Shown: positions 7,738-64,000, numbered from the stretch's first letter. The stretch: 64,000 nt of DNA from IMGVR_UViG_3300017991_000001:147085-211084, one strand, 5' to 3'. A program made the numbers and translations. The notes: generated from the letters alone by a model not told the origin.

Positions 7738-7803
7738 TTGGTGCGGGCAGCTGCCAAGAGCGCATCCCGCGAGACGTAAGGCCAATTGATAAGGAGACAG
7801 GCC

Positions 7804-8751
7804 GTGGCTAACCCAACTGCGAGCGAGCCGACCTCTCGGATGGTCAACGATGCATTCATCGATCAGTTGGCCAGCGGGAACGACCGGATCGTGAAGGAAG
7901 CCCAGGACGCGATCAACGATTACGTCCGGGTAAGGATGCGTGAAGATGGCTTCTGGCGGAGAATCCTCCCGCCGGTGACCATCACCAACGACGAGCTGGA
8001 TCGGCAGGTGGACACCGACAAGCCCGTCAAGGTGGTCGACAAGGAACCTGAGAGCCCTGCGGCGATCAGCGTGCCTTTTGCCTCGCTGCCCATGAACCGG
8101 TACATCCGCGGGCCCCGGTTCCGCGTGATGTTCGACCGCATCCTGACGCCCAAGTTCACGAAGGACGTGGACGAGCTCAGGACCTACGACATGGACATCC
8201 GGCAGATCCTGTCGGACAACTCCATCAAGGACATGCTGGCCGAAGAAGACGGCAAGGCGATTGCCACCGTCAACTTCCTGCTCCTCGGCGTCAACACGCC
8301 CCTGGCCGAGACGGGCGTCGCGCAGTGGGTTGCCATCTCCGGTGGCGTCACCCGCGACAACCTGGCTGAAGCCATGAAGGTGCTCCCCCGCACCCCGAAC
8401 CACCTGAACGTGGCCACGGTGTTGGTCAACAACGTCACCATCTGGGACGTTGTCAAGTTCGGGCGCGACGAGGTCGGTGGTGACCTGTCCCAGGACCTGT
8501 TCGAGAACGGGTTCGCGGAGCGGGAGCTGCTCGGCCGGCGCTGGATCGTCACGATCAAGCGGGACCTGGTGCCTGACAGCACCATCTTCCTGTTTGCCGC
8601 GCCGAAGTTCCTCGGCAAGTTCTTCGTGCTCGAGGACACGACGATGTACATTGATCGCCGTGCCTTCATGCTCGAGTTCTTCGCGTACGAGAGCATTGGC
8701 TCCTCGATCGCGAACGTGGCCGGCATCGGGCGTGTCGACTTCGAGCCCTAA
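7804..8751 (+). CDS. major capsid protein (probable HK97 fold)
   Basis: GTG at 7804 after AAGGAG; ~315 aa; VRVRMREDGFWRRILPP and C-terminal FFAYESIGSSIANVAGIGRVDF resemble large-phage capsid proteins; follows protease and scaffold; followed by a hairpin. Confidence 0.7.
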   Translation: MANPTASEPTSRMVNDAFIDQLASGNDRIVKEAQDAINDYVRVRMREDGFWRRILPPVTITNDELDRQVDTDKPVKVVDKEPESPAAISVPFASLPMNRYIRGPRFRVMFDRILTPKFTKDVDELRTYDMDIRQILSDNSIKDMLAEEDGKAIATVNFLLLGVNTPLAETGVAQWVAISGGVTRDNLAEAMKVLPRTPNHLNVATVLVNNVTIWDVVKFGRDEVGGDLSQDLFENGFAERELLGRRWIVTIKRDLVPDSTIFLFAAPKFLGKFFVLEDTTMYIDRRAFMLEFFAYESIGSSIANVAGIGRVDFEP

Positions 8752-8850: not shown

Positions 8851-9183
8851 ATGAGTCAGGAAATGACCCAGGAGGACGCGGCGCTGTTCGAGAACGTGTA
8901 CGCGCCCGCCTTCGCCCAGAAGATGGCCTCCAACGGCCGCCCGCTCCACGACGACGAGTCGATGGAGCACGCGCTGGAGCTGACGGCGCGGGTGAAGCAG
9001 GAGGTGCAGTCTTCCGACGCCAACTCGATCAAGGAAGCCAACCTGGCTTTCCGCAAGGCGACCGGCGCGGACGAGCGCGATGCCGAAGAGGCTCGCGAGA
9101 CCAGCACCAAGGAGGCTGCCCGCAAGCTGGCGGCCGACCCCGGCTTCAGGCAGATGCTGGAAGCGGCGCGCAGCGCCCAGTAG
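8851..9183 (+). CDS. hypothetical head-module protein
   Basis: GAGGAG RBS; repeated KEA/KMA/KLA. Confidence 0.7.
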   Translation: MSQEMTQEDAALFENVYAPAFAQKMASNGRPLHDDESMEHALELTARVKQEVQSSDANSIKEANLAFRKATGADERDAEEARETSTKEAARKLAADPGFRQMLEAARSAQ

Positions 9184-9218: not shown

Positions 9219-9683
9219 ATGCCGGGTAAGCGTGGAATCGGTGAGGCGGACTTCGTAACGCCCCGCCAGGTATACCGGGAGGATGTCGATGCCGTCGACA
9301 GTGGCGGCGTCACGGACACGGACATCCCCATCCTGGACAGCCGCGAGCTGGCGACTCAGCGACAGGGGTTGGGTCAGGGCGACGTGGCGCAGTACGGGCG
9401 CAACGCGCAGTTGAACCTGGCTTGCATCCCTGAAGGTTTTTCCAGCGTCACGATGCAGTTGTGGCTCTGGGCCGACGTGGAGGAGCCGCTCGAACCGGGT
9501 ACCTCTTCCTCTTCGTACGGCGTGCTGCCGACCACGGAGGAGTGGGTACAGGTCGAGGAAAAGACGATCACGGGACCGGAGTTGTGGGTTGTCAAAGACG
9601 TTCCTCCGGGGCAATATAAGGTTATCGTCACGGCCAAGACAGGCAGTGGCCATCTTCAGATCCGCGAGCAACACGCAGCGTAA
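9219..9683 (+). CDS. hypothetical virion protein with a short Ser tract
   Basis: GAGG RBS; beta-rich; PGTSSSSY. Confidence 0.7.
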   Translation: MPGKRGIGEADFVTPRQVYREDVDAVDSGGVTDTDIPILDSRELATQRQGLGQGDVAQYGRNAQLNLACIPEGFSSVTMQLWLWADVEEPLEPGTSSSSYGVLPTTEEWVQVEEKTITGPELWVVKDVPPGQYKVIVTAKTGSGHLQIREQHAA

Positions 9684-9697
9684 GGAGTGAGGAGAAC

Positions 9698-9943
9698 ATG
9701 AGAACGACCATCACTAACACTTCGGGCGCGGAAAAGACCTTCGGGTGGATTCCTCCGCACGGGCACACCTTGGCGAACGGAGCATCCGTCGTCATTGAGG
9801 GCGACCTGCGCACGATCCTGGGAGGCGGCCGTGGTCGATACTCCAGGGGTCAGGAGCTTGCGGGCCTCAACGACGCGGTCACCCGCGGCCAAGTGACGGA
9901 AGAGGAGACCGTCGGTCCGTCCAGCTCTTCGAGCAGCGCCTAA
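9698..9943 (+). CDS. small protein with FGWIPPHG domain and C-terminal poly-Ser
   Basis: GAGGAG RBS; homologous to the N-terminus of the 59643 protein; ends GPSSSSSSA. Confidence 0.7.
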   Translation: MRTTITNTSGAEKTFGWIPPHGHTLANGASVVIEGDLRTILGGGRGRYSRGQELAGLNDAVTRGQVTEEETVGPSSSSSSA

Positions 9944-9985: not shown

Positions 9986-10022
9986 GCCGCCCGGCTATGT
10001 GTACATGGCCGGGCGGCTTTTT
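9986..10022 (+). terminator. Rho-independent terminator ending the head operon
   Basis: GCCGCCCGGCTATG-TGTA-CATGGCCGGGCGGC stem followed by TTTTT; a second hairpin at 9942-9962 begins with the same 14 bp (AACCGCCGCCCGGC). Confidence 0.8.
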
Positions 10023-10043
10023 CATTAGGAGAGGGACGCACAG

Positions 10044-10967
10044 ATGGCATTCGCGAACGAATGCATTGACGCTCAGGGGGTCTGCCCCAACCGCATCCCG
10101 TTCCTGGTGACCGGGCAGTGCGCCGTGGAGTCGCTGTACATCACCATCAAGGACATCAACAGCGGCGAGCCCATCGACCTGACTCAGTACGGGATCTTCT
10201 CCTCGTCGGACCCGAGCAGCTCATCGTCCTCGTCTTCCTCCAGCTTCTTCAGCAGCAGCTCCTCCTCGGGGGGCGACGACCCGGAGGACGGAGTCGAGTT
10301 CGTGGCCAAGGAGCTGCCTAAAACGCCCACGTACCTCTTCAAGAAGTACGGCGTCGTGGAGAGCGAGGAGGACGCGCGGAACGGTCGGGTGCGCCTGGAC
10401 GTGACGGCCGAGGACACGGCCCGCGCGGGGATCTGGTCCGCGATGGCCGGCGTCTGGTACAACGGCTACATACGCAAGCTGATGCCGTTCTACTACGAGG
10501 TCCAGCCCAACCTGCTGGCCGACTACTGGAACGGCCCCCTGACGACCTACCAGCTGCGCCTGTACCTGCGGGACAAGTGCGCTGAAGACAACTTCCTGCT
10601 CGACGACACGGAGTTCAAGCAGGAAGAGCTGCACGCGATGATGATCAAGGTGATCGACGAGTGGAACGAGGAGCCGCCGCCCGGCTTCGAGTCCAACCCG
10701 GTCGACTTCCCCTACCGTCACAACTGGGCCGAGGCGGTCATAGGCGAGCTGTTCACCATGGCGGCCTACCAGCTGCGCCGGAACAAGCTGGACTACACCG
10801 CCGGCGGGGTGCAGGTGGACGACGAGGCCCGCTGGGAGATGTACCTGGCCCGCGCGAAGGAACTCAAGTCGGAGTGGAAGGCGTTCATCATCCGCAAGAA
10901 GATCGAGCTGAACATTGAGGGTGGTTTCCAGAGCCTGGGAGGGTATCGGCACACGATACCGCGATAG
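10044..10967 (+). CDS. putative head-tail adaptor/neck protein with a poly-Ser insert
   Basis: C-half LRLYLRDK..DNFLLDD..NKLDYTAGGVQVDD resembles connector proteins; position after the capsid operon. Confidence 0.5.
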   Translation: MAFANECIDAQGVCPNRIPFLVTGQCAVESLYITIKDINSGEPIDLTQYGIFSSSDPSSSSSSSSSSFFSSSSSSGGDDPEDGVEFVAKELPKTPTYLFKKYGVVESEEDARNGRVRLDVTAEDTARAGIWSAMAGVWYNGYIRKLMPFYYEVQPNLLADYWNGPLTTYQLRLYLRDKCAEDNFLLDDTEFKQEELHAMMIKVIDEWNEEPPPGFESNPVDFPYRHNWAEAVIGELFTMAAYQLRRNKLDYTAGGVQVDDEARWEMYLARAKELKSEWKAFIIRKKIELNIEGGFQSLGGYRHTIPR

Positions 10968-28997: not shown

Positions 28998-30647
28998 ATG
29001 TCCAGCGACTTGACAATCAACGACCTCGATTCGGACGACGTCCAACAGGCGGAAGGCTTCCTGGTGGACTTCCTGGCCACGGAGTACCCGAGCCTGGACC
29101 TGACGGCCGGCAAGGTTCTGCGTGATCTTCTGATCCGCCCGAACGCGATCTTCCACTCGCTCAACCAGGAGGACATCGACCGGCTGCGCAGGTCCATGAG
29201 CCTAAAAGCCATCGAGGAGGACCCCACCCTGGCCGACGACGACATCGTCGACGGGGTGCTCTCCAACTACCGCGTGGAGCGCGGCGAGGGCACCAAGGCC
29301 GAGGGGCAGGTCACCATCATCGTCGCCACGTTCACGACGACCACCGTCAGCGTGGGCACGGTCTTCACGGCCAACGGCGTCAACTTCGTCACCACCCAGA
29401 CCTACAGCGGCGTGACGACGGCCGACGCCGTGGTCTCGGACCAGCAGAAGGAGATCCAGCCCAGGAGCGACGGCACGTACGGTTTCACGATCCCCGTGGA
29501 GGCCGAGGAGGTGGGCGCCGTGGAGGTGCGGCGCAGCACGCGCTTCGCCGTGGTGCCCGAACCGGCGGGCCTGGTGGACGCCGTCGCGGCGGAGGACTTC
29601 TCGGGCGGCTCGGACACCGAGACCAACTCGGAGCTGATCGAGCGGTTCAAACTGGGGATCTCCCCGTCCACGTTCGCCGGCCGCGTGCACATCCAGTCGC
29701 TGCTGCGGGAGGAGGTCCCGAACCTGCAGGCCAGTTCCATCACCGGCTTCGGCGACCCCGAGATGCTGCGGGACCGCCACAACATCTTCGCCGTGTCGCA
29801 GGGCGGCAAGGCCGACATCTGGGCCCGGACGGGCACGCTGCCCACCACCCGCACGCTGACCAAGACGGCCACCCTGATCGACGCGGACAGCAAGACGTGG
29901 CAGGTTTCGATCCTGCGGGACGACGCGCCGGGCTTCTACACCGTGCCGTTCATCCTCCCGGAAGGGGCCGGCACGGACGAGAACACCTTTGAGATCACCG
30001 CGGAGACGCGGGGGATGGACCTGACCGCCGAGACGGGGGCGTTCGTGCCGGACGTGGACGACCTCGTCGAGGGCGGCTACTCGCGGTACCAGACGGCGGT
30101 GCTGCAGTTCGTCGACCCGGACACGGACACCTCGGGCCTGACCGAGCACGAGTCCACCCAGACGGTCCAGGTGGGCGTGCTGGCGTTGCCCGACATCGAC
30201 ACGCTGCAGGCCCTGTCCAACGACCGGGACCGCCGCAACCCGCAGGCCGACTACCTGGTCAAGGCGCCGGTGCCGGCCTTCGTGGCGATCACGCTGACGG
30301 TCCAGTACAAGACCGACACCGAGGCGCCGGACGCCGACGCGATCAAGGAGTCGATCGCCGGCCGGGTCAACGACCTGGGCTTCGAGGTGGGCAAGCTGCC
30401 CTCCAGCATGGTCTACGACGCCGTACACAATGCCACTTCCGAGCTGGACGCGCTGGTGGTCGCGCCCATCGACATGTTCTGCCAGATCCGCAGGCCCGAC
30501 GGGACCGTCGTCTCCATCCGCGACGGGAACGAGATCAGGATTCCCGACGAGCCGGAGCTGGGCGTGACCTCCCGCACGACGATGTTCTACGTGGACGTGA
30601 GCGACATTGACGTGACCGTCGAACCGCTGCCGGTGCTGCCGGCGTGA
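28998..30647 (+). CDS. baseplate J/gp6-like wedge protein
   Basis: GKVLRDLLIRP, RGEGTKAEGQVTI, FSGGSDTETNSELIER and GGKADIW motifs. Confidence 0.8.
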   Translation: MSSDLTINDLDSDDVQQAEGFLVDFLATEYPSLDLTAGKVLRDLLIRPNAIFHSLNQEDIDRLRRSMSLKAIEEDPTLADDDIVDGVLSNYRVERGEGTKAEGQVTIIVATFTTTTVSVGTVFTANGVNFVTTQTYSGVTTADAVVSDQQKEIQPRSDGTYGFTIPVEAEEVGAVEVRRSTRFAVVPEPAGLVDAVAAEDFSGGSDTETNSELIERFKLGISPSTFAGRVHIQSLLREEVPNLQASSITGFGDPEMLRDRHNIFAVSQGGKADIWARTGTLPTTRTLTKTATLIDADSKTWQVSILRDDAPGFYTVPFILPEGAGTDENTFEITAETRGMDLTAETGAFVPDVDDLVEGGYSRYQTAVLQFVDPDTDTSGLTEHESTQTVQVGVLALPDIDTLQALSNDRDRRNPQADYLVKAPVPAFVAITLTVQYKTDTEAPDADAIKESIAGRVNDLGFEVGKLPSSMVYDAVHNATSELDALVVAPIDMFCQIRRPDGTVVSIRDGNEIRIPDEPELGVTSRTTMFYVDVSDIDVTVEPLPVLPA

Positions 30648-35465: not shown

Positions 35466-37346
35466 GTGGCGCCCATGGCATCCCCCGTCACACCCTGGAT
35501 AAGCCGGGTCAATCCCATCCGCGATGGGGAAGAGGTACGCCAGCAGGTCGCGAACCGGTACCCGCACGAGCTGAAGGATCGCACCCAGCACCTCAAGGAC
35601 CTGCTGGACGCGATGAGTGCCGGACAGGCGCTGTTCCTGCGCGACGTGGCGCTCGACAGCGCCGTCGAGGTGGGGCACTACGTCTACTGGGACGCCTCCG
35701 CGCTGGAGTACAAGCGGGCCGTGGCGGCCCTGGTCTACGACGCTTCGGTGGGCGGTCTGGTCGTGGCGGACTCCAGCTACGCGGTCGGCATCGTGGTCTA
35801 CAAGGCCGGCGCCACGCGCGGCGACATCCTGCAGACGGGCTTCCTCAACGGCGACTTCGACTTCACCAACACGATCGGCTCGGCGGGCGACACGGCGGCG
35901 GAGGCGGGCGCCTACTACCTGTCCGGGACCACGCCGGGCATGGCGGTCAAACAGAAGCCGCCCGTCGGCATCTACCTCATGTTCCTGCGCGGCGACGGCG
36001 GCGCGCACGTGGCCCCGGCCCCCAGAGAGGTGCTGGAGGATCACATCCACTACGTGATGGATCTACACGCCCAACCGGCCGGCACGCTGGAATGCACCGA
36101 ACCACACAACGAATACGAATTCCTTACCGTTGACGACACGATGCCAGGCTGGCTGCCGGCCGACCATTCATCGTTCAACGGCGCGGCCCCCTCGGGTGCC
36201 GTGCTGGGCTACAACCTGGCCATGCACACGGAGCTGGAGCGCGTGTGGCCCCCGTTCCCCATGGACAGCGTCTTCGTGGAGCGCGACGGCGTGGGCGAGC
36301 ACCCCAACCGCTACATCGTCGACGCCACGACGCTGTGGTGGACGGAGAAGTGCTACGGCAAGGCCCCGTGGTCGCCGGAGATCCTGGACTGCGGTTCGCC
36401 CGCCTCGTCATCGTCATCGTCTTCCTCGAGCAGCAGCAGCAGCGAGGCCGGACCCGTGGCGCGCGAGTGTGAGAGCGGCGGCGTGCTTGAGCAGATGGGC
36501 TTCGTCAAGGGCGACCCCTTCGAGCGGCGCTTGCGCCTGTACTTCACCAAGATGCTGGCGAAGACCTCCAACACGGTGGTGACCAGCCTGAGGGCGGCCG
36601 AGGGCAGCCCGATCACCGTGCAGGGCTGTGACGGGGAGGAAGCCGGCACCGGGGACCTGGAAGTCGACATCGACCTGGCGCTGGGCCTGACCGAAGGGGA
36701 GGGCGGCTACCAGGCGATCAAGGACATCGACGGGCTGACGTTCAAGCGCGGCCCCGTCATCGAGGCGATCAAGGCCGGCACCAACGTTGAAATCAACGCG
36801 GTGTCGGGCGAGAGCGCCATGGACACGAACGGGTACGTGTACGGCAAGGCCGTGATCAACGCCGTACTGCCCGGTTCCGACCAGCAGGAAGGCAGCATCG
36901 TGCTGGTCTCGCTGGACAAGGCGCGCGAGGACGTGGTCGATGACATCTTCGTGCTGTCGCTGCCGGCCGGGATCAACTCCTCCTTCCGCGGCAAGATCGA
37001 CGTGCCCCGCGACGGGATCGTGGCCAACCCGCAGATGGAGCTGTGGTTCTGGCTGCTGGCCAACTCGGCCGGCGAGCTGCCCGAGCTGCCGCTTTCGTAC
37101 CGCCGCCTGCCCCGCCCGGACGGGTGTACGTCCCTGGCGTGGCCGGAGGCCGACACGGCGCTGGCGAACCTGAACCCGGGCTGCGGCACCCTGACCGCCA
37201 AGCGCTACGTGGAGGTGACCGGCGCGGCCTTCTCCATCGCCGAGGGCGACCAGGTGAACTTCGAGTTGGGACGGCTCTCTACGGACACGTACGCGGGCAA
37301 GGTGAGCATCGCCCGCATGGGCTTTCGGATAACAGCAGGCAGCTAG
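35466..37346 (+). CDS. baseplate/tail structural protein with poly-Ser
   Basis: Position; PIRDGEEV...NR N-terminus; 13-Ser tract. Confidence 0.6.
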   Translation: MAPMASPVTPWISRVNPIRDGEEVRQQVANRYPHELKDRTQHLKDLLDAMSAGQALFLRDVALDSAVEVGHYVYWDASALEYKRAVAALVYDASVGGLVVADSSYAVGIVVYKAGATRGDILQTGFLNGDFDFTNTIGSAGDTAAEAGAYYLSGTTPGMAVKQKPPVGIYLMFLRGDGGAHVAPAPREVLEDHIHYVMDLHAQPAGTLECTEPHNEYEFLTVDDTMPGWLPADHSSFNGAAPSGAVLGYNLAMHTELERVWPPFPMDSVFVERDGVGEHPNRYIVDATTLWWTEKCYGKAPWSPEILDCGSPASSSSSSSSSSSSSEAGPVARECESGGVLEQMGFVKGDPFERRLRLYFTKMLAKTSNTVVTSLRAAEGSPITVQGCDGEEAGTGDLEVDIDLALGLTEGEGGYQAIKDIDGLTFKRGPVIEAIKAGTNVEINAVSGESAMDTNGYVYGKAVINAVLPGSDQQEGSIVLVSLDKAREDVVDDIFVLSLPAGINSSFRGKIDVPRDGIVANPQMELWFWLLANSAGELPELPLSYRRLPRPDGCTSLAWPEADTALANLNPGCGTLTAKRYVEVTGAAFSIAEGDQVNFELGRLSTDTYAGKVSIARMGFRITAGS

Positions 37347-38285: not shown

Positions 38286-39706
38286 CGCAGCCCGTCTTCG
38301 AGTTCTACAGTGCCAACGAGTTCCGCGAGTACCCCTTCGACACGCGGCGTGATGACGGTCTGCACGAGCTTTTCGTGGACGCTTACGTGATGCATACGGC
38401 GCACCGGGATAACGCCGGACGCCTGCGCATGGTGAGTTTCAATACGACCGGGGACCTGGAGCTGCGCTTCGAGGACGGCACGTTGCTGGGCACTCTCACA
38501 AGTGCAGACGGGTTTATTTCCAGCTCTTTTGGCCGCTATACCTTGTACGAATGGCGAAAATCAGTTACGTATGGGGCCGGGTTCACGTCAGAGGATCTTA
38601 TCGCCCGCCTAGTGACAGTCACCGAGAAGTTGAGCAGCTTCTCTTTTCCAATCTCACCGTCAGACGCCTACCTCCTCGCCTCCAGGGTGAACCCACGTCC
38701 GTTGAACGTGATCTCCACGGCTTTGGCGTTCCCAGGTTTGGCTTGTTGTCTGGGCGGCCCCAATCGCAATGCTTTGCAGATGGAATCAGGCTATAACCTT
38801 GAGCTTTCCACGCAAGCACCAGAAAGCGAAGTCGGCCTGGCCCTGGCCGAGACGCCGGAAGTGAGGGCACCGGAAGAAGTGTCCGTGTCGGCGTTGGCTG
38901 GCGCGGGCGCGGGCACCTTCCCCTTGTGCGAGGACCCCTCCGAGTTCGTGCGCTCGCTCAACGGTGTCCAGCCCAACGACGAGAAGGACTTCCGCCTCGG
39001 ACTGGTGGACTGCACCTGGGAGGAGACGCGGCTGGTGGGCGGCACCTCCTCGCCGGTCAATCCCAACACCGATTACCTGGGCTCGATCATCGATGCCACG
39101 GAGAAGATCATCCTGCAGCTGCACCAGGCCTGTCGGGCCTGCTGCGACTGCCCGGACTACGGCCGCGCCTACGACATCATCTATACGACCTGGTCGCGCG
39201 CGAAGACCGTGAACAACCGTCTCATCGAGGTGCTTGGAGACTACGAGCGCATCCTGAACGAGTACAAGGAGATCAAGGCGGACCGCGAGACCGACCTGCA
39301 GGTGAAACTGCGCCTCATCGCGACGCCCGACTACCAGGTGGCCATCGCCGTGCAGATCGGGAACAACTCCCACACGGACCTGAACCCGATGACGCTGACG
39401 GTCGACGCGAACAACGTTGCGTCGCCGACCATCTATCCCGTGTACACCGAGGGTAGCGGCTTCGTGGAGATGGAAGGTACCCACAACGCACAGAGAGACC
39501 CAGCCGGAACGCCGGGCGGTCCCTTCACGCTCGAGATGCCGGCGCTGGCGCCCGGCAAGTACGCCATCTTTCGGATGGCGGTGCGGTACACCGGCAACCT
39601 GCGCTACCAGAAGTACTCGGAGGTTTCGGCAAGGGTGGTGAACGACGAGTTTGACGAGCTGGCGGAGCGGCGCATCCTGCTTCGTGGGCCCCTGGTGAAA
39701 GAATAA
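38282..39706 (+). CDS. tail/baseplate paralogue 2
   Basis: EFYSANEFREYP; SLNGVQPNDEKD; CRACCDC; coiled coil then Ig-like C-terminus. Confidence 0.7.
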   Translation: MTQPVFEFYSANEFREYPFDTRRDDGLHELFVDAYVMHTAHRDNAGRLRMVSFNTTGDLELRFEDGTLLGTLTSADGFISSSFGRYTLYEWRKSVTYGAGFTSEDLIARLVTVTEKLSSFSFPISPSDAYLLASRVNPRPLNVISTALAFPGLACCLGGPNRNALQMESGYNLELSTQAPESEVGLALAETPEVRAPEEVSVSALAGAGAGTFPLCEDPSEFVRSLNGVQPNDEKDFRLGLVDCTWEETRLVGGTSSPVNPNTDYLGSIIDATEKIILQLHQACRACCDCPDYGRAYDIIYTTWSRAKTVNNRLIEVLGDYERILNEYKEIKADRETDLQVKLRLIATPDYQVAIAVQIGNNSHTDLNPMTLTVDANNVASPTIYPVYTEGSGFVEMEGTHNAQRDPAGTPGGPFTLEMPALAPGKYAIFRMAVRYTGNLRYQKYSEVSARVVNDEFDELAERRILLRGPLVKE

Positions 39707-41265
39707 TGCTTGTCTTTTCGGAATGGCTGAACGCGAATGAGGTCCGCCGCTACCCCCTCCATGACAGTGCGAGCGGGGAGCTGCAGGACAATATCCTCGT
39801 GGACGCCCGGCTTTGGGTGCCCAAGAGCGCGGGGCGCGTGGTCTACGTCTCTTCCGTGGGCATCACCAGCGGGCTGGTCACCCTGACCTTCCTGGCCGCG
39901 GCGGACTCCCCTTTCCTGGACGGCACCGGCACGCCGGTCTCCTTCACGCCGCTGGCGGTCGTGCGCGCCTCGCGGCCCGTGACCAGGTTCGTGAACATGG
40001 CCGTCGAGGCGCTCTACCCCGGCGTGGGTGGGTGGATCGCGCTCGGGGAAGGCGCCGTCGAGATCGAGAGCCTGAACGCCCGCTTTACCGGCCCGGCCGA
40101 GACCCAGCTCAACGAGCGCTGCGTGAACGTCTACGACGACGCGGCCGTGTCCAGCGTGGGCAAGGAAAACGTTGCCGAGGGGCTGACGGGCCTGATCACG
40201 CTCCGCGGCGAAGCCGGTGTGCTGAAGACGTTCAAGGCCACCCGTACGGTCGAAGGGGTGGACCGCGAGGTAGCCGTAGTGGCCATGGACCTGGGCGACA
40301 ACAAGGTGTCCAGGCTGCAGGACTTCTCCGGCGTGTGTGGCGGCCGGCCGCAAGCCAACACCTGCAGGAAGCGCGTGGTCGAGCGGATCAACACGGTCAC
40401 CCCGGACGACGACGGCAACATCGACCTGGTCTTCGAGGGGGACATGACGGTCGGGGACGTGCAGCGGGGGCTCATCGTGGACTTCCCCGTGGGACTGGAC
40501 GACGTGTGCCCCGAGTCGATCTCCAACGAGATCCCGTTCCCCGTACCGGGCGGCCCGCCGAGCCCGACGCCGCCCGAGCCGCCGCCGGAACCGTCCGGGT
40601 CTTCGGGCCAGTCCGACTCATCCGAGGGGCTTCCTTCGGGCTATTGCGAGGACTTCGAGGACGGCGTGGCCGAGGAGCTGGACAACTTCGTGGGCAGCTT
40701 CACAATCGAGGACGTACCCGGGCGCACCAAGCGTTACGTCAGCGCCGCCGATGACACCGGTCAGCAGCTTGCCACCAACTACCTGCGGCAGTTCAACACG
40801 GAAGAGGGTGAGACTTATACGGTCGTAAGCATCATTCGTCCGCGCAGCGTGGATGGCAAGAGTTTCCTGATCGCGGGCTTCAAGAACGACAACCTGTTCA
40901 CGTTCGCTGGCATTACGTTGGAGAACGGGGGCAGCTTCTTCGTCGGCAACAAGAGCGGCGAGACAGGCGGGTCCTTCGGTAGCGGGTACAGACCCTACCT
41001 GGAGTTCGCCCCCGAGTGGGACACGCCGCCGGACACGGATTACCAGGTAACCTTCGCCATCTACTCGAGCGACATCGCTGAGATGAAGGTGGCGTGGAAC
41101 GACGGCATCGCCGACCGGGAGCAGACACAGCTTGTGGTGCTGGCTTCCTTCCAGGAGAAGGGACGGCCCGGTCTGGGTGTGCTGAATTCGGAAACGGAGT
41201 TCGATGACTTCGGGGTCAACTGCGAAGAGTTCCCGTCGTCGTCATCGTCAAGTTCGGGGCCTTAA
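39706..41265 (+). CDS. tail/baseplate paralogue 3 with C-terminal beta domain and poly-Ser
   Basis: EWLNANEVRRYP; RINTVTPDDDGN; Pro/Ser linker; ends [10 protein letters not shown]. Confidence 0.7.
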   Translation: MLVFSEWLNANEVRRYPLHDSASGELQDNILVDARLWVPKSAGRVVYVSSVGITSGLVTLTFLAAADSPFLDGTGTPVSFTPLAVVRASRPVTRFVNMAVEALYPGVGGWIALGEGAVEIESLNARFTGPAETQLNERCVNVYDDAAVSSVGKENVAEGLTGLITLRGEAGVLKTFKATRTVEGVDREVAVVAMDLGDNKVSRLQDFSGVCGGRPQANTCRKRVVERINTVTPDDDGNIDLVFEGDMTVGDVQRGLIVDFPVGLDDVCPESISNEIPFPVPGGPPSPTPPEPPPEPSGSSGQSDSSEGLPSGYCEDFEDGVAEELDNFVGSFTIEDVPGRTKRYVSAADDTGQQLATNYLRQFNTEEGETYTVVSIIRPRSVDGKSFLIAGFKNDNLFTFAGITLENGGSFFVGNKSGETGGSFGSGYRPYLEFAPEWDTPPDTDYQVTFAIYSSDIAEMKVAWNDGIADREQTQLVVLASFQEKGRPGLGVLNSETEFDDFGVNCEEFPSSSSSSSGP

Positions 41266-42948: not shown

Positions 42949-44769
42949 ATGGCCAGAGCTTTTCCAGAGCGCTCGGAGTGCCCGGAAGTTCCCGATAACG
43001 ACGCGATCGGGACGCTGAACCTCAATGACCCGTCGGAGCCGGCGGACCGCATCATCCAGACGCGGTTCTTCACGTTCCCTCCACCGGAACCGCCCAACTT
43101 TGACTTCGGCTGCTACGGCCCCACCGCGACCGTAAGCGTGTCCGAGGCCTCGTCGGCGGCCGGCGAGGTCGACATCGAGTACCCGAACGAGGACGAGACG
43201 GGGCGCTGTGAGCCACGCTTCAACTTCGACTTCTCCGTGCCGCCCTGTGTGACGGCCAGCACCGAGGCCTCCATTCAGGTCAGTTCGGAACTGGCGGACC
43301 CGGCGGTGGAGTTCGAGGCCTCCCGCAAGACCGGCGACCCTTGTGCCTGGGACTTCCGCTTCAACCTGAACCTGCCCGGTTTCTGCCCGACGGTGCGCAC
43401 GGACGCCTCCATCTCCATCAACGCCTCGCTTTCCGACCCGACGGTGGAGTTCGTCGGCGAGCGCGACCCGCTGGAACCGTGCCGTTTCAACTTCGACCTG
43501 GACATCCAGCTGCCGGAGTTCGGAGAGGATGACGTCTGTCAGGCCAGGTTGGCCACCACGGGCAACATTTCCCTGTCGGGCCTGCAGACCGTAGACGGCG
43601 TCGCGGCCAGCGAGGACGACGTGATCCTGGTGCGGGCGCAGTCGACGGGCAGCCAGAACGGCGCCTACCGCATGAAGTCCGGCGCCTGGGAGCGGACTTG
43701 CGACATGTCCCGGGCCGGCATCATCGTAACGGTGCGGGAGGGTGCGGAGTACGCGGGCACGGCGTGGTTGTTGAGCACCAACGACCCCATCTCGGTGGGT
43801 TCAACGCCGCTGACCTTCACCCTGATAAGCGGATCGACCTGCTGCTGTTCAGCCAGGGTCGCCACGCTCGAGGACATCACGCTCAGCGGGTTGCAGACGA
43901 TCGACGGCGTCTCGGTGGCCGAGGACGACATCGTGCTGGTGAAGAACCAGGGCTCCGAGTCGGAGAACGGCCCCTACCTGGTCAAGGATGGGGCGGCGTG
44001 GGAGCGCACCTGCGAGGTCTTCTCCGGGCACACCGTGTCTGTCCGGGAGGGCACGTACCAGAAGCAGACGGTTTGGATGCTGACCACCGACGGCGCGATC
44101 GAGTTGGATACGACGGGGCTCACTTACCGCCAGGTGGTCGACCGCCCAATGTGCCGGGTGGCCTCCGGCGGCCACACAATACGCTCAACCACCCGCACGA
44201 TCGACGGCGTCGCCACGTCCGTCGACGACATCGTCCTGCTCATGAACCAGAACAACCCGGCACAGAACGGCCTTTACCTGGTCAAGAGCGGGAGCTGGGT
44301 GCGCACCGGCGACATCACGCCGGGCATGATCATCACCGTGCAGGAAGGGGCTGTGTACGGCGGGCAGTCCATCGTCCTGTCCACGGCGGACCCGATCACG
44401 GTGGGTACCACGAACCTGACCTTCTCGCCATTGCGCATGGTCGTGCGGGCTTACGTTGCGCTGGACAAGGGGCCGTTCGGGCAACCCGCTCAGGGGTTGA
44501 CGGGCACGCCCGACATCGACGATATAACCACGCAGGCCGGCGACGTCGTCCTGGTCTTCAATTCCAGTACGCCGGCGAACAACGGTGTTTGGGTCGTGCC
44601 GGGTACGGGGGCCTGGCAAGAGGCAATGCCCGGCACCACGGGCTTTGCCGGTACAATCGTCTCCGTGCGGGAAGGGAACAGGTTCGGACAGGTTTCCTTC
44701 ATGATTCTGGGCGGGGCAGACCGGGATATTTGGGGCATCACCGGCGTGGTGGGCCCGAACACAATTTGA
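42949..44769 (+). CDS. fibre-like virion protein with tandem repeats
   Basis: Four ~100-aa copies of R.AT..I.LSGLQTIDGV....D.VLV.NQ....NG.Y, a module common in phage fibre proteins; three N-terminal C..F.F...P repeats. Confidence 0.7.
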   Translation: MARAFPERSECPEVPDNDAIGTLNLNDPSEPADRIIQTRFFTFPPPEPPNFDFGCYGPTATVSVSEASSAAGEVDIEYPNEDETGRCEPRFNFDFSVPPCVTASTEASIQVSSELADPAVEFEASRKTGDPCAWDFRFNLNLPGFCPTVRTDASISINASLSDPTVEFVGERDPLEPCRFNFDLDIQLPEFGEDDVCQARLATTGNISLSGLQTVDGVAASEDDVILVRAQSTGSQNGAYRMKSGAWERTCDMSRAGIIVTVREGAEYAGTAWLLSTNDPISVGSTPLTFTLISGSTCCCSARVATLEDITLSGLQTIDGVSVAEDDIVLVKNQGSESENGPYLVKDGAAWERTCEVFSGHTVSVREGTYQKQTVWMLTTDGAIELDTTGLTYRQVVDRPMCRVASGGHTIRSTTRTIDGVATSVDDIVLLMNQNNPAQNGLYLVKSGSWVRTGDITPGMIITVQEGAVYGGQSIVLSTADPITVGTTNLTFSPLRMVVRAYVALDKGPFGQPAQGLTGTPDIDDITTQAGDVVLVFNSSTPANNGVWVVPGTGAWQEAMPGTTGFAGTIVSVREGNRFGQVSFMILGGADRDIWGITGVVGPNTI

Positions 44770-51554: not shown

Positions 51555-52040
51555 ATGACGACCGTGCCGACCGAGTTCTATACGGGTGACAGCAGCCGCT
51601 ACATCAAATTGCAGCGGGAGGGCATGACCACCTACGTGAGCGGCCGCACGCAGGGCTTCCGCGTGCGGATCACGGCCATCGAATCCAACGAGATGCCGCT
51701 GGAGATCTTCGTCTACCAGCACCTCCCCTTCCCCGACAGCGAGACCGGGTACCAGGACCGTTTCGTCAACATTGCCAGCCCCAACGACATCGAGGAGTAT
51801 AATGTGGGTGAGGTGGGGGATTCCACGCGCCCCTTCTTCCGGCTGGCCGCGATCGACCTGGTCTTCCGCAACGATGACATGCTCGAGGAGGCGGTCCAGA
51901 AGATCTACGACGAGATCGGCCAGCTCGTGGAGAGCCTCAACTACATGGACGACCTCGAAGTGCAGGAGGAAGTGACCATTGGGACACCGCCAACTAGTTC
52001 CTCCTCCTCGTCCTCCGATTCAAGCTCGAGCTCGTCCTAA
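51555..52040 (+). CDS. hypothetical acidic protein with C-terminal poly-Ser
   Basis: Ends PPTSSSSSSSDSSSSSS. Confidence 0.75.
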   Translation: MTTVPTEFYTGDSSRYIKLQREGMTTYVSGRTQGFRVRITAIESNEMPLEIFVYQHLPFPDSETGYQDRFVNIASPNDIEEYNVGEVGDSTRPFFRLAAIDLVFRNDDMLEEAVQKIYDEIGQLVESLNYMDDLEVQEEVTIGTPPTSSSSSSSDSSSSSS

Positions 52041-59642: not shown

Positions 59643-60902
59643 ATGGCCCGTAACCCACAGGCCTTGACCATCGTCAAGAACATCTCCGGCGGGGGACTGT
59701 TCTTCGGGTGGATTCCTCCGCACGGCCGCTACCTCGAAGACGACGAGCGGATCGAAATACAGGGTACGCTCGAGACCCTCTTCCAGACGGACCCCAACAA
59801 GACCTACCTGCGCGAGTACCTGCGCGACATCGCCGACCAGCGTGTCGAGGTTTCCCACGAGGCCGGCTCCACGGTCGCCGCGCACACGCCTGTCGACGAC
59901 AACTTCGAGCTGGCCAACATCACCAGCGCGGAAGCCGAGTTCTACCGGGACCAGATGCTGTGTCTCTCGGAGGAGTCGGGCCTTTACCGTTTCGACGCGC
60001 AAAGCACGCTGACACCCGACGCCGACAAGGTCGTCATACCGTTCGACCTGCCGTCCGTGGCGCTGCCCGGACGCTGGATCAAGCTCACCGGGCCGGCTGC
60101 GGTGGTTACGCCGGGACCGACGGGCGTCACCGGGGTCACGGGTGCGACCGGGGCCGACGGGGTCACGGGTGCGACCGGGGCGACAGGCGTCACCGGTGCC
60201 ACCGGTGCGGGCGTGACGGGCGTGACGGGTGTGACGGGTGTGACCGGTGTCACGGGTCCTCCCGGCATGGGCACCGCGATCAAACTGGAAGTCGCGGACA
60301 TCGACAACCCGATCGAGCTGCATGGCGTCCAGGGCGACGAGAACGGGAAGCTGGCGGTTGTTTCACAGGTCAACGAGTGCAACAACGATTTCACCATCTA
60401 CTCGTGGGATTCGGGGGAGGCGCCGTCCAGCTCATCTTCGTCCTCTTCCTCGTCGAGCTCATGTGAACCTGAGGACATACCTTACACTGTGGATGGGGCG
60501 GTCGGCCGCTGGATCGCGGTGGGCGGCAAATACATCTACAACCTCCAGGACACAGGTGATTTCGACGGAGATCAGATAGTCACGTCCGGCAGCGGAATTA
60601 CAACGATCTCCACTGTTCCGGTGCCCGACAATACGGTTATACTGATCACAGTGTGGGTCTCGTGCCGGCGCCTCGACGACGAGGACCGCGGAGGGTATCA
60701 GCGTCAGGCGCTCGTGTACCGGGAAGGGGGCGGAACTGCCAAGAGGCAAGGCAACACGCAGACCCTGTTCACGAGGGAGTCGGTGGGCCAGTACCAGGTC
60801 TTCATCAATGTGAGCGGGAACAACGCGCTGATCCAGGTGCGGGGCCGCGTAGGCCATACGGTTAGATGGAAGAGCAAGTACTTCACCACGGAGGTCGCGT
60901 AA
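59643..60902 (+). CDS. collagen-like fibre protein 1 (FGWIPPHG N-domain, G-X-T repeats, poly-Ser)
   Basis: GVT/GAT triplets; 12-Ser tract; C-terminal [12 protein letters not shown] domain. Confidence 0.8.
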
Positions 60903-60905
60903 CCA

Positions 60906-62120
<1,215 letters not shown>

Positions 62121-62131
62121 GGTTCACATGA

Positions 62132-63178
62132 ATGGCCATCGAAAGTGTTGTAGATATGGGCGAGGGCGTGCGATGCGCGGTCGTTTCACACGACCCGACA
62201 TCGACGTCCACTGACGTCCCCAAGGGCTCTCAGCTCTTCAGCACCAGCACCAACAAGTGGTATAGCAAGGACGACGACGGGGACACCACCAACGTAACCG
62301 AGTTTGGACCGCCCGGACCCACGGGCGTAACCGGCGCTACAGGCGTCACAGGCGCGCTCGGCGTGACAGGGGTCACGGGCGTGACGGGTAACGCCGGCCC
62401 CATCGGCGTGACCGGCGTCACGGGTCCGGCAGGCGCCACGGGTCCGCAGGGGGTTACAGGCGCGCTCGGCACGACGGGCGCCACCGGCCCGGCGGGCGCA
62501 ACGGGACCACAGGGCGTGACCGGCGCGCAAGGGGCTACGGGCGCGCAGGGCGCCACAGGTAACCAGGGCCCCACCGGGGCGACGGGGCCGCAGGGCGCGA
62601 CGGGACCTCAGGGCGCCACGGGCGCGCAGGGGGCTTCGGGCGCGACCGGCGTTACGGGCGCGATCGGTGTCACGGGCGTGACCGGGGCCACGGGCGTCTC
62701 AGGGGCGGGCGTGACCGGCGTCACGGGACCGACCGGTCCCACGGGAGTCACCGGGAACCAGGGCGTTACAGGCGTCACCGGCGCCACCGGTCCTGCGAGC
62801 GGCGTTTTCGGCAACGATTATCAGACCGTCACTTCCCTGACCGTCAGTTCCACCACGTCCTCTTCGTGGCAAACCAAGTTGACGTTGACGACGCCTGCGT
62901 TGACGGGAACATATCGCGTAAGCTGGACGTGCGGCTTGAGCCAGAGCAACCTGGCCGATCAGGTGGAAGGACGACTGTACAACACCACGGACGCCGCGCA
63001 GGTGGGGGTGGCCTACAACTACGAACCGAAACAGACCACGAACATCTTCCGCGCCGGCAGCTTCGCCGAGGTCGTCTTCACGGGGTCCGCCAAGTCGTTC
63101 GAGATCCAGTACAGGCAGCAGAGCGGACAAACGGCTTACATACAAGACGCCCGCATCGAGATTTGGAGAGTGTCGTAG
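62132..63178 (+). CDS. collagen-like fibre protein 3
   Basis: G-X-T/G-X-Q run; N-domain shared with fibre 2; distinct beta-sandwich-like C-terminus. Confidence 0.85.
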
Positions 63179-63204: not shown

Positions 63205-64000
63205 ATGTCACACACCTACACCTACAGCGTGGCGGACGATTTCCCCGACGGCGCGGTCAACGTGACCAAGCTGGTCAAGGAGATTGCGGCGGCGGAGTTG
63301 GGGGAGGATCTGGAACACATCACCACGGGCGAAGGGGGTGACGAGGACCGCCTCGACCTTGTCTTCGAGAACGAACTTTCGTCCGGCGACAAGACCAAGC
63401 TCGACGGTGACACCAGCGACCCGGCCGGAGGGCTCATCGCCGACCACGACAACGGCCCGTTCGTGCCCACGGACATCGAGTACTGGCTCACCCAGACGGC
63501 CGAGGTCACCATTGGCGACATCACCGGGCCCTGGAACGTGATGCAGATCCTGCAGCACAGAAAGGACCTGTACAACGATTCTGACAGCCCGCTCTATGAT
63601 GCCGAACACCAGCCGATTTTGGGTACGGGCGGCATCCTCGAAGACCACGGCGACAAGATCACGAACCTTGAGAACATCCACGCCAAGCTGGGCTGGCACA
63701 ACCAGCAGGTGTTGCAGGCGCTCTACGCCAAGCCGAAGGACCTGCTCATCTACTACGGCTGGACGAACAGCTTCAACAGCGGCGTCAACGGCTGGGACAA
63801 CTGGAAGGTCGCGCTCGACATGTCCCGCTACGAGCTGGTTGTCTTCGGCGCCGGCATCGAGGACTCCGGCCACGGCGACCACTCCAACTGCCAGGCCATC
63901 ATCAACTACATCAAGTCGCTCAACCCGAACACCAAGCTCTTCGGCTACGTGAGCACGAACCAGACCTACGCGAACTTCACCTCCAAGACCGACGACTGGG
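63205..64000 (+). CDS. partial gene; virion-associated protein with a putative glycoside hydrolase (GH114/GH166-like TIM barrel) domain
   Basis: GAGGAG RBS; open to the window end; LLIYYGW...YELVVFG...IINYIKSLNPNTKLFGYVS. Confidence 0.5.
   Translation, partial: MSHTYTYSVADDFPDGAVNVTKLVKEIAAAELGEDLEHITTGEGGDEDRLDLVFENELSSGDKTKLDGDTSDPAGGLIADHDNGPFVPTDIEYWLTQTAEVTIGDITGPWNVMQILQHRKDLYNDSDSPLYDAEHQPILGTGGILEDHGDKITNLENIHAKLGWHNQQVLQALYAKPKDLLIYYGWTNSFNSGVNGWDNWKVALDMSRYELVVFGAGIEDSGHGDHSNCQAIINYIKSLNPNTKLFGYVSTNQTYANFTSKTDDW

What the first reader, a model, noticed from the sequence alone, without database searches (positions are those of the whole stretch)
9698..9943. Same FGWIPPHG domain as a stand-alone head-operon protein and as the N-terminus of a collagen fibre 50 kb away
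Seen: [22 protein letters not shown]...VVIEGDL (9698) aligns with [22 protein letters not shown]...IEIQGTL (59643). At DNA level 24 bp are identical (CTTCGGGTGGATTCCTCCGCACGG, 9739-9762 and 59702-59725). Both proteins also have poly-Ser. Inference: a capsid-docking module displaying either a bare Ser tag or a collagen head fibre. The exact DNA identity may reflect recent duplication or gene conversion, or a nucleic-acid-level site.
Basis: partly seen in the sequence, partly recalled or inferred. Interest (0 to 1): 0.6.

Follow-up and report, generated by a model that had tools for sequence, protein, structure and literature searches.

The report
Shared anchor domain on jumbo-phage proteins
A small protein encoded next to the capsid gene and a collagen-like fibre 50 kb away share a roughly 70-residue N-terminal domain that is widespread and unnamed in a group of uncultivated giant phages and looks like a plug holding varied surface modules on the virus particle, probably the head, though that attachment is not shown.

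Summary
The 24-mer occurs exactly twice in the 211-kb phage genome, in the same reading frame of an 81-aa ORF (9698-9943) and a 419-aa collagen protein (59643-60902).

The similarity is not limited to the 8-mer. Profiles of the two families align over 68 columns (E 2.8e-15), and both are predicted to fold in the same beta-beta-beta-beta-alpha-alpha-beta order.

The domain defines a large family with no Pfam or PHROG match (590 clusters at 50% identity). In 30 of 33 related jumbo-phage loci the gene lies 0.5-4 kb downstream of a conserved major capsid protein. It is usually the last gene before an intrinsic terminator.

The domain is nearly always N-terminal. What follows varies: nothing but a poly-Ser tail, a TIG Ig domain, LamG-like domains, a cement-like domain or collagen.

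Best reading: a virion anchor module, most likely on the capsid, carrying interchangeable display modules. Docking itself is inferred; the one complex prediction gave no verdict.

The 24-nt identity is not a DNA-level site, because synonymous sites vary freely in about 45 homologues. Recent duplication is excluded: the flanks are 49% identical. Chance gives such a run with p about 0.008, so an old short conversion patch stays possible but unproven.

The parts
7786..8751 (+). Major capsid protein gene (321 aa), first recognisable gene of the unit that ends with p81
   Evidence: phrog_2522 major head protein E 3.6e-5. tblastn gives 31% identity over 96% to the annotated MCP of Salmonella phage Arash. 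It is 41-73% identical in the MCP alignment of 24 related jumbo-phage loci, 57-73% in all but one, and up to 95% in the closest contigs.
8851..9183 (+). p110, small ORF between the MCP gene and p81
   Evidence: No Pfam or PHROG match. tblastn finds orthologues at the same place in close relatives L005, L040, L042 and L060. By eye, a 130-150-aa ORF with a similar N-terminal sequence sits just upstream of the FG-domain gene in several more distant loci; this was not tested by alignment.
9219..9683 (+). p154, small protein between p110 and p81
   Evidence: No Pfam or PHROG match. Orthologues are found only in close relatives: L004-L006, L040, L042, L060.
9698..9943 (+). p81: stand-alone FG[WFY][ILV]PPHG domain (residues 1-71) plus a disordered tail ending in PSSSSSSA
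   Evidence: ORF with an AGGAG ribosome-binding site. Twelve roughly 82-aa homologues, most with the same C-terminal poly-Ser. AF2 model has pLDDT 83, with order b-b-b-b-a-a-b and residues 75-81 disordered. No Pfam or PHROG family.
9739..9762 (+). 24-nt exact repeat, copy 1 (codons for FGWIPPH plus flanking bases)
9920..9937 (+). Poly-Ser tail (6 Ser, mixed TCN/AGC codons)
   Evidence: The tail is conserved in orthologues.
9986..10027 (+). Intrinsic-terminator-like hairpin (14-bp stem, 11 G-C pairs) followed by TTTTT, 43 nt after the p81 stop
   Evidence: Of 27 related loci, 22 have a hairpin of -12 kcal/mol or stronger followed by T4+ within 160 nt of the stop of the orthologous gene.
59643..60902 (+). 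fib419: collagen-like fibre protein. It comprises the FG domain (residues 7-73), a second conserved module (about 80-150), GXY repeats (157-208), a middle region with 12 Ser, and a C-terminal globular domain
   Evidence: Six orthologues with a conserved N-terminal 150 aa. In the AF2 model of residues 1-161, residues 8-73 have the same secondary-structure order as p81.
59661..59861 (+). FG[WFY][ILV]PPHG domain of fib419
   Evidence: hhalign of the small family against the fibre family: probability 98.5%, E 2.8e-15, 68 columns.
59702..59725 (+). 24-nt exact repeat, copy 2
   Evidence: The identical 24-mer is in the fibre orthologue of L057.
60426..60461 (+). Poly-Ser run (12 Ser) between the middle and C-terminal parts of fib419
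   Evidence: The run is conserved at this position in five of the six orthologues.
60906..62120 (+). fib404: second collagen fibre. It has a different N-terminal domain and a C-terminal domain homologous to that of fib419
   Evidence: Pfam Collagen E 6e-38. C-terminal domains are 42% identical, E 7e-25.
62132..63178 (+). fib348: third collagen fibre. It shares the N-terminal domain of fib404 and has a different C-terminal domain
   Evidence: Pfam Collagen E 2.2e-24. N-terminal 60 aa are 46% identical to fib404, E 2e-18.

Best explanation
The shared sequence is a compact alpha/beta domain of about 70 residues whose invariant loop is FG[WFY][ILV]PPHG. I read it as the anchor that fixes proteins to the virion of a large clade of uncultivated jumbo myoviruses, most probably to the capsid surface.

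The ancestral and commonest form is a stand-alone protein of 105-125 aa. It is encoded as the last gene of the major-capsid-protein transcription unit.

p81 belongs to a short subfamily in which the domain is followed only by about 10 residues and a conserved, disordered poly-Ser tail.

Other members carry cargo after the domain, often via a Ser-rich linker. In fib419 the cargo is a trimeric collagen stalk with a distal globular domain.

On this reading p81 and fib419 compete for, or share out, the same class of sites on the particle. p81 fills sites with a short hydrophilic tail and fib419 puts a fibre there.

Shown: the homology, the fold prediction, the N-terminal position, the variety of cargo, the gene position and the terminator.

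Inferred: that the domain binds the virion, that the site is on the capsid, and the stoichiometry.

The 24-nt identity is a by-product of the near-invariant peptide, plus either chance or an old short conversion patch. It is not a functional DNA or RNA element.
For: (1) The homology covers the whole domain: hhalign probability 98.5%, E 2.8e-15, 68 columns. AF2 gives the same strand/helix order for p81 residues 2-71 and fib419 residues 8-73.

(2) The family is large. A profile search found 590 clusters at E<=1e-3 and 252 at E<=1e-10. In 141 of the best 150 the domain starts within the first 22 residues. Lengths: 24 are <=100 aa, 103 are 101-160 aa, 23 are >160 aa.

(3) Synteny is conserved. In 30 of 33 IMG/VR loci from contigs mostly 100-235 kb long, the gene follows an MCP gene that is 41-83% identical, with a gap of 0.5-4 kb (usually under 1.5 kb).

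(4) A strong terminator-like hairpin follows p81, and a comparable hairpin follows the orthologue in 22 of 27 loci. The gene is therefore co-transcribed with the MCP gene and separated from the downstream genes.

(5) The cargo is interchangeable in the same genomic slot. L060 (MCP 80% identical, with p110 and p154 orthologues present) has domain + TIG Ig domain (Pfam E 3.2e-14). L059 has domain + a cement-like domain (PF09956, E 4.7e-4, below cut-off) and a second tandem copy. L006/G003 has five copies, including two LamG-like fusions joined through poly-Ser.

(6) Collagen genes lie 2 kb or less downstream of the stand-alone gene, on the far side of its terminator where one is seen, in L007, L008, L010, L013/L014 and L027. 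In L013 and L027 they have no N-terminal domain of their own.

(7) The pairing of a short poly-Ser-tailed stand-alone protein with a collagen fibre bearing the domain recurs in G001 and in sample SRR23086403.

(8) In fib419 orthologues the N-terminal 150 aa is conserved (52-90%) while the stalk length and C-terminal domain vary. That is the usual polarity of phage fibres: N-terminal anchor, distal binding domain.
Against: There is no direct evidence of binding. The predicted complex of MCP with the domain gave no verdict (ipSAE 0.27, 0.31, 0.01; mark 0.32).

The fold has no significant match to any solved or predicted decoration-protein anchor.

fib419 itself is not in the head module. It follows a large ORF with a zinc-ribbon-like N-terminus (56946-59642), 50 kb away from p81.

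The genes downstream of p81 (p307, p325, p935) are unidentified and could be neck or tail genes, so a neck or collar site cannot be excluded.

The cement-like hit is below Pfam's cut-off and is seen in only one member.
Confidence: 0.5

Rival explanations
1. The domain anchors proteins to the neck, collar or tail rather than to the capsid lattice, in the manner of the N-terminal domain of T4 fibritin. On this reading p81 is a minimal whisker stub.
For: In the window p81 lies directly upstream of p307/p325/p935, a conserved block of unknown function that could encode neck or tail proteins. The collagen repeats of fib419 hit PHROG families annotated as tail fibre. The phage is a myovirus with a baseplate wedge gene at 28998-30647.
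Against: A terminator separates the gene from the downstream block. In many relatives up to about 4 kb of variable genes are inserted between it and the p307 orthologue, whereas in most loci it stays 0.5-1.5 kb from the MCP gene. Up to five cargo-bearing paralogues in one genome fit a lattice with many sites better than 6-12 neck sites. The tail-fibre PHROG hits are driven by GXY repeats only.
Confidence: 0.2
2. The domain is mainly an oligomerisation or folding nucleus, for example a trimerisation domain that registers the collagen helix. It would not be a docking module, and the stand-alone proteins would have some other role.
For: Collagen-like stalks are trimeric, as described for SPP1 gp12 (PMC7602432), and from general knowledge bacterial and phage collagens need a non-collagen domain to trimerise. 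The domain sits N-terminal to the collagen stretch.
Against: In fib419 about 80 residues of another conserved module separate the domain from the collagen repeats. Most family members have no collagen at all, and some carry a TIG Ig-like domain. Collagen proteins in L013 and L027 lack the domain. The two roles are not exclusive.
Confidence: 0.1
3. The stand-alone protein is not a virion component. It could be an assembly factor, a maturation regulator or a host-directed protein, and the fibre merely reuses a stable small fold.
For: There are no proteomic data and no known fold relatives. The complex prediction was not supportive.
Against: The position inside the MCP unit is strictly conserved. 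The domain is N-terminal with surface-type cargo such as Ig, collagen and LamG-like domains. The invariant loop is conserved along with a highly conserved MCP.
Confidence: 0.1
4. The 24-nt identity marks a functional nucleic-acid element (a binding site, RNA motif or recombination site) present in both genes.
For: Exact identity of 24 nt, including three minority codons (GGG 0.22, ATT 0.10, CCT 0.11), has a chance probability of about 0.008 given the protein alignment and codon usage.
Against: In about 45 homologous genes the same peptide is encoded with freely varying synonymous codons. There are only two copies in the genome, and apart from a near-identical fragment none in IMG/VR. The fibre orthologues at 90% protein identity (L037, L039) differ at 6 of the 24 positions.
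Confidence: 0.03

Closest known systems
T5 decoration protein pb10 (N-terminal capsid-binding domain plus C-terminal Ig-like domain; Vernhes et al. 2017, cited in PMC7602432)
   Same: A small N-terminal anchor is followed by a displayed Ig-like domain. Family member P0040 (163 aa: domain + TIG) has essentially this architecture and size, and occupies the slot of p81 next to the MCP gene.
   Different: No sequence or fold match was found to any solved chain, and pb10 does not appear in the Foldseek or VIA lists. Capsid binding is not shown here. The family also carries collagen, LamG-like and cement-like cargo, or none.
SPP1 gp12, the collagen-like auxiliary capsid protein (trimer at hexamer centres; Zairi et al. 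2014, cited in PMC7602432)
   Same: It is a collagen-like trimeric protein proposed to stand on a phage capsid, and so is a precedent for a 'collagen head fibre'.
   Different: From my recollection gp12 is a protein of about 64 aa that is mostly collagen repeats and has no separate anchor domain. fib419 is 419 aa with a 70-aa globular N-terminal domain, a second module and a distal domain. No sequence comparison was made here.
phi29 head fibre gp8.5 and T4 fibritin (wac)
   Same: These are trimeric fibres attached by an N-terminal part to the head (phi29) or neck (T4), with the distal end free. They are dispensable accessory fibres.
   Different: Their stalks are coiled-coil rather than collagen. 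No Pfam or PHROG match to these families was found for p81 or for the fib419 N-terminus.
Phage cement proteins, Pfam PF09956 (Phage_cement_2)
   Same: One cargo type fused to the domain (P0111 and its relatives P0087, P0103, P0147, P0158) gives a weak hit to this family (E 4.7e-4). That hints these fusions sit on capsids.
   Different: The hit is below the gathering cut-off and is found in one of five members. A profile of the five found nothing in the PDB. p81 and fib419 themselves have no such domain.

Membership tests
FG[WFY][ILV]PPHG-domain family (unnamed; defined here by alignments A4/A5) | Invariant loop G-x-x-P-P-H-G, with N7, L25 and G35 conserved | tested here: met
   Both p81 and fib419 carry it. 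Invariant columns are listed.
FG[WFY][ILV]PPHG-domain family (unnamed; defined here by alignments A4/A5) | Profile-level homology over the whole domain of about 70 residues | tested here: met
   hhalign probability 98.5%, E 2.8e-15, 68 columns.
FG[WFY][ILV]PPHG-domain family (unnamed; defined here by alignments A4/A5) | Predicted b-b-b-b-a-a-b fold | tested here: met
   p81 model has pLDDT 83. fib419 residues 8-73 have the same order of elements at pLDDT 70-88.
FG[WFY][ILV]PPHG-domain family (unnamed; defined here by alignments A4/A5) | Gene lies just downstream of the MCP gene and is followed by a terminator | tested here: met
   Met for p81 and for most relatives. Not met for fib419, which lies 50 kb away after ORF 56946-59642.
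Collagen triple-helix repeat (Pfam PF01391), for fib419 | Score above the Pfam gathering cut-off; runs of GXY triplets | tested here: inconclusive
   26.4 bits against a cut-off of 27.2, E 5.9e-6. GXY triplets are plain at residues 157-208 with one interruption. The neighbours fib404 and fib348 pass clearly.
Capsid decoration proteins (functional class: pb10, Hoc, gpD, Soc, gp12 and others) | Physical binding to the outside of the mature capsid | not testable with these tools
   The predicted MCP + domain complex gave no verdict. Virion proteomics or cryo-EM is needed.
Capsid decoration proteins (functional class: pb10, Hoc, gpD, Soc, gp12 and others) | Sequence or fold relationship to a known decoration protein | tested here: not met
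   No Pfam or PHROG family. No Foldseek hit with E<=0.001 in PDB or BFVD. Best VIA Z is 3.8 (YqbF, 2hjq), which is within noise. Atlas hits are unnamed.
Phage_cement_2 (PF09956) | Match to the Pfam model | tested here: not met
   There is no hit for p81 or fib419. The only hit is a sub-threshold one in the cargo part of a distant fusion, P0111.
Tail fibre proteins (PHROG 'tail fiber' families 5073, 6320 and others), for fib419 | Similarity outside the collagen repeats, or a position in a tail or baseplate module | tested here: not met
   All these hits cover residues 148-260, the GXY region. The gene is not adjacent to the baseplate genes at about 29-31 kb.

The most novel reading that the evidence does not exclude
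A whole clade of jumbo phages has a single conserved socket on the capsid lattice and a 70-residue adaptor domain that plugs into it. Evolution has hung interchangeable cargo on this adaptor: a collagen fibre, Ig, lectin-like or cement domains, or just a poly-Ser brush. Several paralogues per genome would share the sites. The binding loops of co-resident paralogues would be kept identical by short-patch gene conversion, as the 24-mer hints, so that they stay compatible with one socket.
Probability: 0.15. Interest if true: 0.65.

Novelty: new variant of a known kind. Interest (0 to 1): 0.45.

Why it matters
If the domain is a capsid (or virion) anchor, it gives a name and a testable function to a family of about 600 protein clusters that Pfam and PHROGs leave blank. 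It would also mark the decoration or fibre slot in a large, wholly uncultivated clade of 150-235-kb phages.

It would explain how these phages swap surface modules without touching the capsid protein.

It would offer a natural small adaptor for displaying cargo on large capsids.

The paired arrangement of a bare poly-Ser version and a collagen-fibre version in one genome suggests that fibre density may be regulated by competition for sites, which can be tested. If instead the domain turns out to be a neck anchor, the value is similar but smaller.

Tried and rejected
Complex prediction of MCP (alignment A7) with p81 residues 1-74 (alignment A4) gave no verdict: ipSAE 0.27/0.31/0.01 against a mark of 0.32. 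It counts neither for nor against binding.

Fold searches with the p81 model in PDB (Foldseek), BFVD, VIA-align wide and the ESM Atlas found nothing significant. The weak top rows (PsaD, ribosomal proteins, YqbF at Z 3.8, lambda gpFI C-domain at Z 2.7) were rejected as noise. The ESM Atlas feature search returned only unnamed clusters with scores below 0.9.

Pfam and PHROGs on p81, on 36 family members and on the neighbouring genes gave no family.

A profile of the cement-like cargo (A6) against PDB sequences found nothing.

tblastn of a 112-aa family member against 50,697 cultured-phage records found no match.

Two giant fn3-repeat proteins among the profile hits (P0064, P0096) match only short pieces of the profile repeatedly and were set aside as spurious.

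Glycosylation of the Ser tail: a GT2 gene follows the family gene in L007, L010 and L059. The window's own genome has no PF00535 match, so I did not pursue the idea for this phage.

Recent duplication is rejected. Nucleotide identity outside the 24-mer is 46/93, and 8 of 10 identical residues outside the motif use different codons.

The test for conversion using relatives was inconclusive. The fibre orthologue nearest at the DNA level (L057) already has the 24-mer. The next ones (L037, L039) have such different codon usage that synonymous sites carry no signal.

No RNA run holds the phage, so expression could not be checked and read laying was not used.

The AF2 model of fib419 residues 75-161 has low confidence and was not interpreted.

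Full report
**1. The observation**

The window is the last 64 kb of a 211,084-bp IMG/VR phage record with a 123-bp terminal repeat, that is, a complete jumbo-phage genome. Almost all long ORFs in the window are on the + strand.

The 24-mer CTTCGGGTGGATTCCTCCGCACGG is at 9739-9762 and 59702-59725. There is no other copy with up to 3 mismatches in the window or the whole genome.

Both copies are in frame. One is in an 81-aa ORF (p81, 9698-9943) and the other in a 419-aa ORF (fib419, 59643-60902). BLASTP of the two proteins gives 17/39 identities, E 7e-10.

p81 ends in PSSSSSSA. fib419 has 12 consecutive Ser and GXY repeats at residues 157-208.

**2. How far the similarity goes**

p81 has 11 homologues of 81-133 aa (nearly all 81-86) in the 5.8-billion-protein set. 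The N-terminal 150 aa of fib419 is conserved in six collagen proteins.

Profiles of the small family (A4, 36 sequences) and the fibre family (A3) align over 68 columns: probability 98.5%, E 2.8e-15. This covers p81 residues 2-73 and fib419 residues 8-75.

AF2 models p81 with mean pLDDT 83. Strands are at 2-7, 13-15, 23-25 and 30-34, helices at 37-42 and 51-62, and a strand at 66-71. The Ser tail is disordered.

For fib419 residues 1-161 the same order of elements appears at residues 8-73 with pLDDT 70-88. The rest is poorly modelled.

The whole core of p81 is the shared domain.

**3. What the family is**

A scan of IMG/VR with the family alignment found 33 loci, most on contigs of 100-235 kb.

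tblastn with the window's proteins shows a conserved order: a 423-aa ORF, a 168-aa ORF, the MCP gene (41-83% identical), then the domain gene after a gap of usually 0.5-1.5 kb (up to 4 kb). After that comes a variable stretch, and in about half the loci orthologues of p307, p325 and p935.

The MCP call rests on phrog_2522 and on 31% identity to the annotated MCP of Salmonella phage Arash.

An exhaustive profile search with the 72-position domain model found 590 clusters (50% identity) at E<=1e-3 and 252 at E<=1e-10.

Among the best 150:
- 141 have the domain within the first 22 residues.
- 103 are 101-160 aa. In 48 of these, a P[CSF][WG] motif (typically DPCW) lies in the last 35 residues of the roughly 45-residue extension.
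- 24 are <=100 aa. In 13 of these, at least 4 of the last 12 residues are Ser, as in p81.
- 23 are longer than 160 aa.

The longer members carry varied C-terminal parts:
- a TIG Ig domain (P0040, Pfam E 3.2e-14);
- collagen (P0145, P0016, P0018);
- domains that by eye resemble LamG jelly-rolls, joined through Ser-rich linkers (P0097, P0099);
- Ig-like repeats (P0152);
- a domain shared by five proteins, one of which weakly hits Phage_cement_2 (P0111, E 4.7e-4, below cut-off).

None of 36 family members matches any Pfam family. PHROGs gives only two isolated weak hits. The family is unnamed.

**4. Evidence on where it acts**

(a) *Transcription unit.* A 14-bp-stem hairpin followed by T5 lies 43 nt after the p81 stop, and no comparable site lies between the MCP gene and p81. 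A hairpin of -12 kcal/mol or stronger followed by T4+ lies within 160 nt of the stop of the orthologous gene in 22 of 27 relatives. The gene therefore closes the MCP unit and is set apart from the downstream genes.

(b) *Same slot, different cargo.* In L060 (MCP 80% identical, p110 and p154 orthologues present) the p81 position holds domain + TIG. In L059 it holds domain + cement-like domain, followed by a second family gene. L042 has two tandem short copies. G003 has five copies.

(c) *Collagen genes nearby.* Collagen genes lie 2 kb or less downstream of the stand-alone gene, beyond its terminator where one is seen, in L007, L008, L010, L013/L014 and L027. In L013 and L027 the collagen protein begins with GXY repeats and has no N-terminal domain of its own. 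The fusion seen in fib419 may thus unite two functions that are separate in those phages. This is an inference.

(d) *Recurring pairing.* A short Ser-tailed stand-alone protein together with a collagen fibre carrying the domain also occurs in G001 and in sample SRR23086403.

(e) *Fibre polarity.* In fibre orthologues the N-terminal 150 aa is conserved, while stalk length and the distal domain vary.

All of this fits an N-terminal anchor with a displayed C-terminal part. Co-expression with the MCP points to the capsid.

It is not proof. The predicted MCP + domain complex gave no verdict. No fold relative among known decoration proteins was found. A neck or collar site remains possible, because p307, p325 and p935 are unidentified.

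**5. The 24-nt identity**

From the genome's codon usage, the chance that seven identical residues use identical codons is 0.013. The chance that a second copy uses exactly these codons, including minority GGG, ATT and CCT, is 0.0007.

I simulated both coding sequences from the protein alignment and the codon usage. A run of 24 or more identical bases in register appeared in 0.8% of 200,000 trials.

Outside the run, identity is 46/93. Eight of the ten identical residues outside the motif use different codons. This rules out a recent duplication.

Across about 45 homologous genes the motif is written with freely varying synonymous codons. In IMG/VR the 24-mer occurs only in a near-identical fragment of the same phage. 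This rules out a conserved nucleic-acid element.

The fibre orthologue L057, from the same metagenome and about 92% identical in the first 200 nt, carries the same 24-mer. The closest p81 orthologue (L040) shares TGG ATT CCT CCG CAC GG. More distant fibre orthologues have CCG/CCA and CAT.

The identity is therefore at least as old as the split from L057. It may reflect an old short conversion from the p81 gene into the fibre gene, or chance at about 1 in 125. The data cannot decide between these.

**6. Poly-Ser**

Runs of five or more Ser occur in eight + strand ORFs of the window's virion-gene region. Three of them sit at or within a residue or two of a C-terminus. Codons are a mix of TCN and AGC.

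The run is conserved in fibre orthologues and in p81 orthologues. In G003 it serves as the linker to cargo.

Poly-Ser is therefore a lineage-wide linker or tail feature, not a mark specific to these two proteins. Its function in p81 is unknown. The window's genome has no family-2 glycosyltransferase.

**7. Comparison with known systems**

The working principle is that of modular decoration proteins and head fibres. Examples are T5 pb10 (anchor + Ig), SPP1 gp12 (a collagen-like trimer on hexamers), phi29 gp8.5 and T4 Hoc (review PMC7602432).

Membership in any of those families was tested by sequence and by fold and was not met. I file the domain as a new, unnamed family that probably works like a decoration or fibre anchor.

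**8. Verdict**

The find is a real and widespread but functionally unproven domain family. Interest is moderate (0.45). Novelty is 'new variant of a known kind'.

Noticed in passing
window 9986-10027: Strong intrinsic-terminator-like hairpin (14-bp stem, 11 G-C pairs, T5 tail) directly after p81. A comparable hairpin follows the orthologous gene in 22 of 27 related loci, so the gene closes the MCP transcription unit.
   Followed up: yes
window 10215-10268, 16045, 36405-36443, 41236-41256, 46469, 51996-52037, 60426-61, 9920-37: Poly-Ser runs of 5-13 residues, with mixed codons, occur in eight + strand ORFs of the window's virion-gene region. In p81, the 519-aa ORF (39706-41265) and the 161-aa ORF (51555-52040) the run sits at or within a residue or two of the C-terminus. 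The function is unknown, and the genome has no GT2 gene.
   Followed up: partly
window 59643-63178: The three adjacent collagen genes shuffle modules. fib419 and fib404 share the C-terminal globular domain (42% identity, E 7e-25). fib404 and fib348 share a different 55-aa N-terminal domain (46%, E 2e-18). So one distal tip type is shown on two kinds of anchor.
   Followed up: partly
window 59880-60092 (fib419 residues about 80-150): A second conserved module (...YRFD...GRWIK) lies between the FG domain and the collagen stalk. It hits phrog_4302 (unknown function, E 1.5e-5) and recurs in P0135. The AF2 model of it is poor.
   Followed up: no
window 56946-59642: An 898-aa ORF directly upstream of fib419 keeps that position in relatives (L030, L037-L039, L057). 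By eye its N-terminus carries a CxxC...CxxC zinc-ribbon resembling primase CHC2 fingers. Pfam finds nothing.
   Followed up: no
window 28998-30647 and 42949-44769: There is a baseplate wedge gene (phrog_6, E 6.8e-20), so the phage is a myovirus. A 606-aa protein has tandem repeats of about 100 residues that hit PHROG families annotated as head decoration or tail fibre (E down to 3e-65).
   Followed up: no
L006 / G003 (143.7-145.4 kb, 161.6 kb, 98.9 kb): One related phage has five genes with the domain. Three are in tandem after the MCP gene: one short Ser-tailed copy and two LamG-like fusions. Two more lie elsewhere in the genome.
   Followed up: partly
L007 6385-7668, L010 6631-7875, L059 5826-7085: A family-2 glycosyltransferase gene lies beside the FG-domain gene in three relatives. 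In L007 and L010 it sits between that gene and a collagen gene. This hints at glycosylated fibres or Ser/Thr tracts in those phages.
   Followed up: partly
window 63205-64000, continuing over the record's end: The last ORF of the window continues across the 123-bp terminal repeat into the start of the record (488 aa in all). The fibre cluster is therefore not at a true genome end.
   Followed up: yes
whole window: The phage DNA is held by sediment and seawater metagenome runs from nine studies, and no RNA run holds it. The nearest cultured relatives by MCP (Salmonella phage Arash, Vibrio phages D69, D148 and D181) are only 31% identical.
   Followed up: partly
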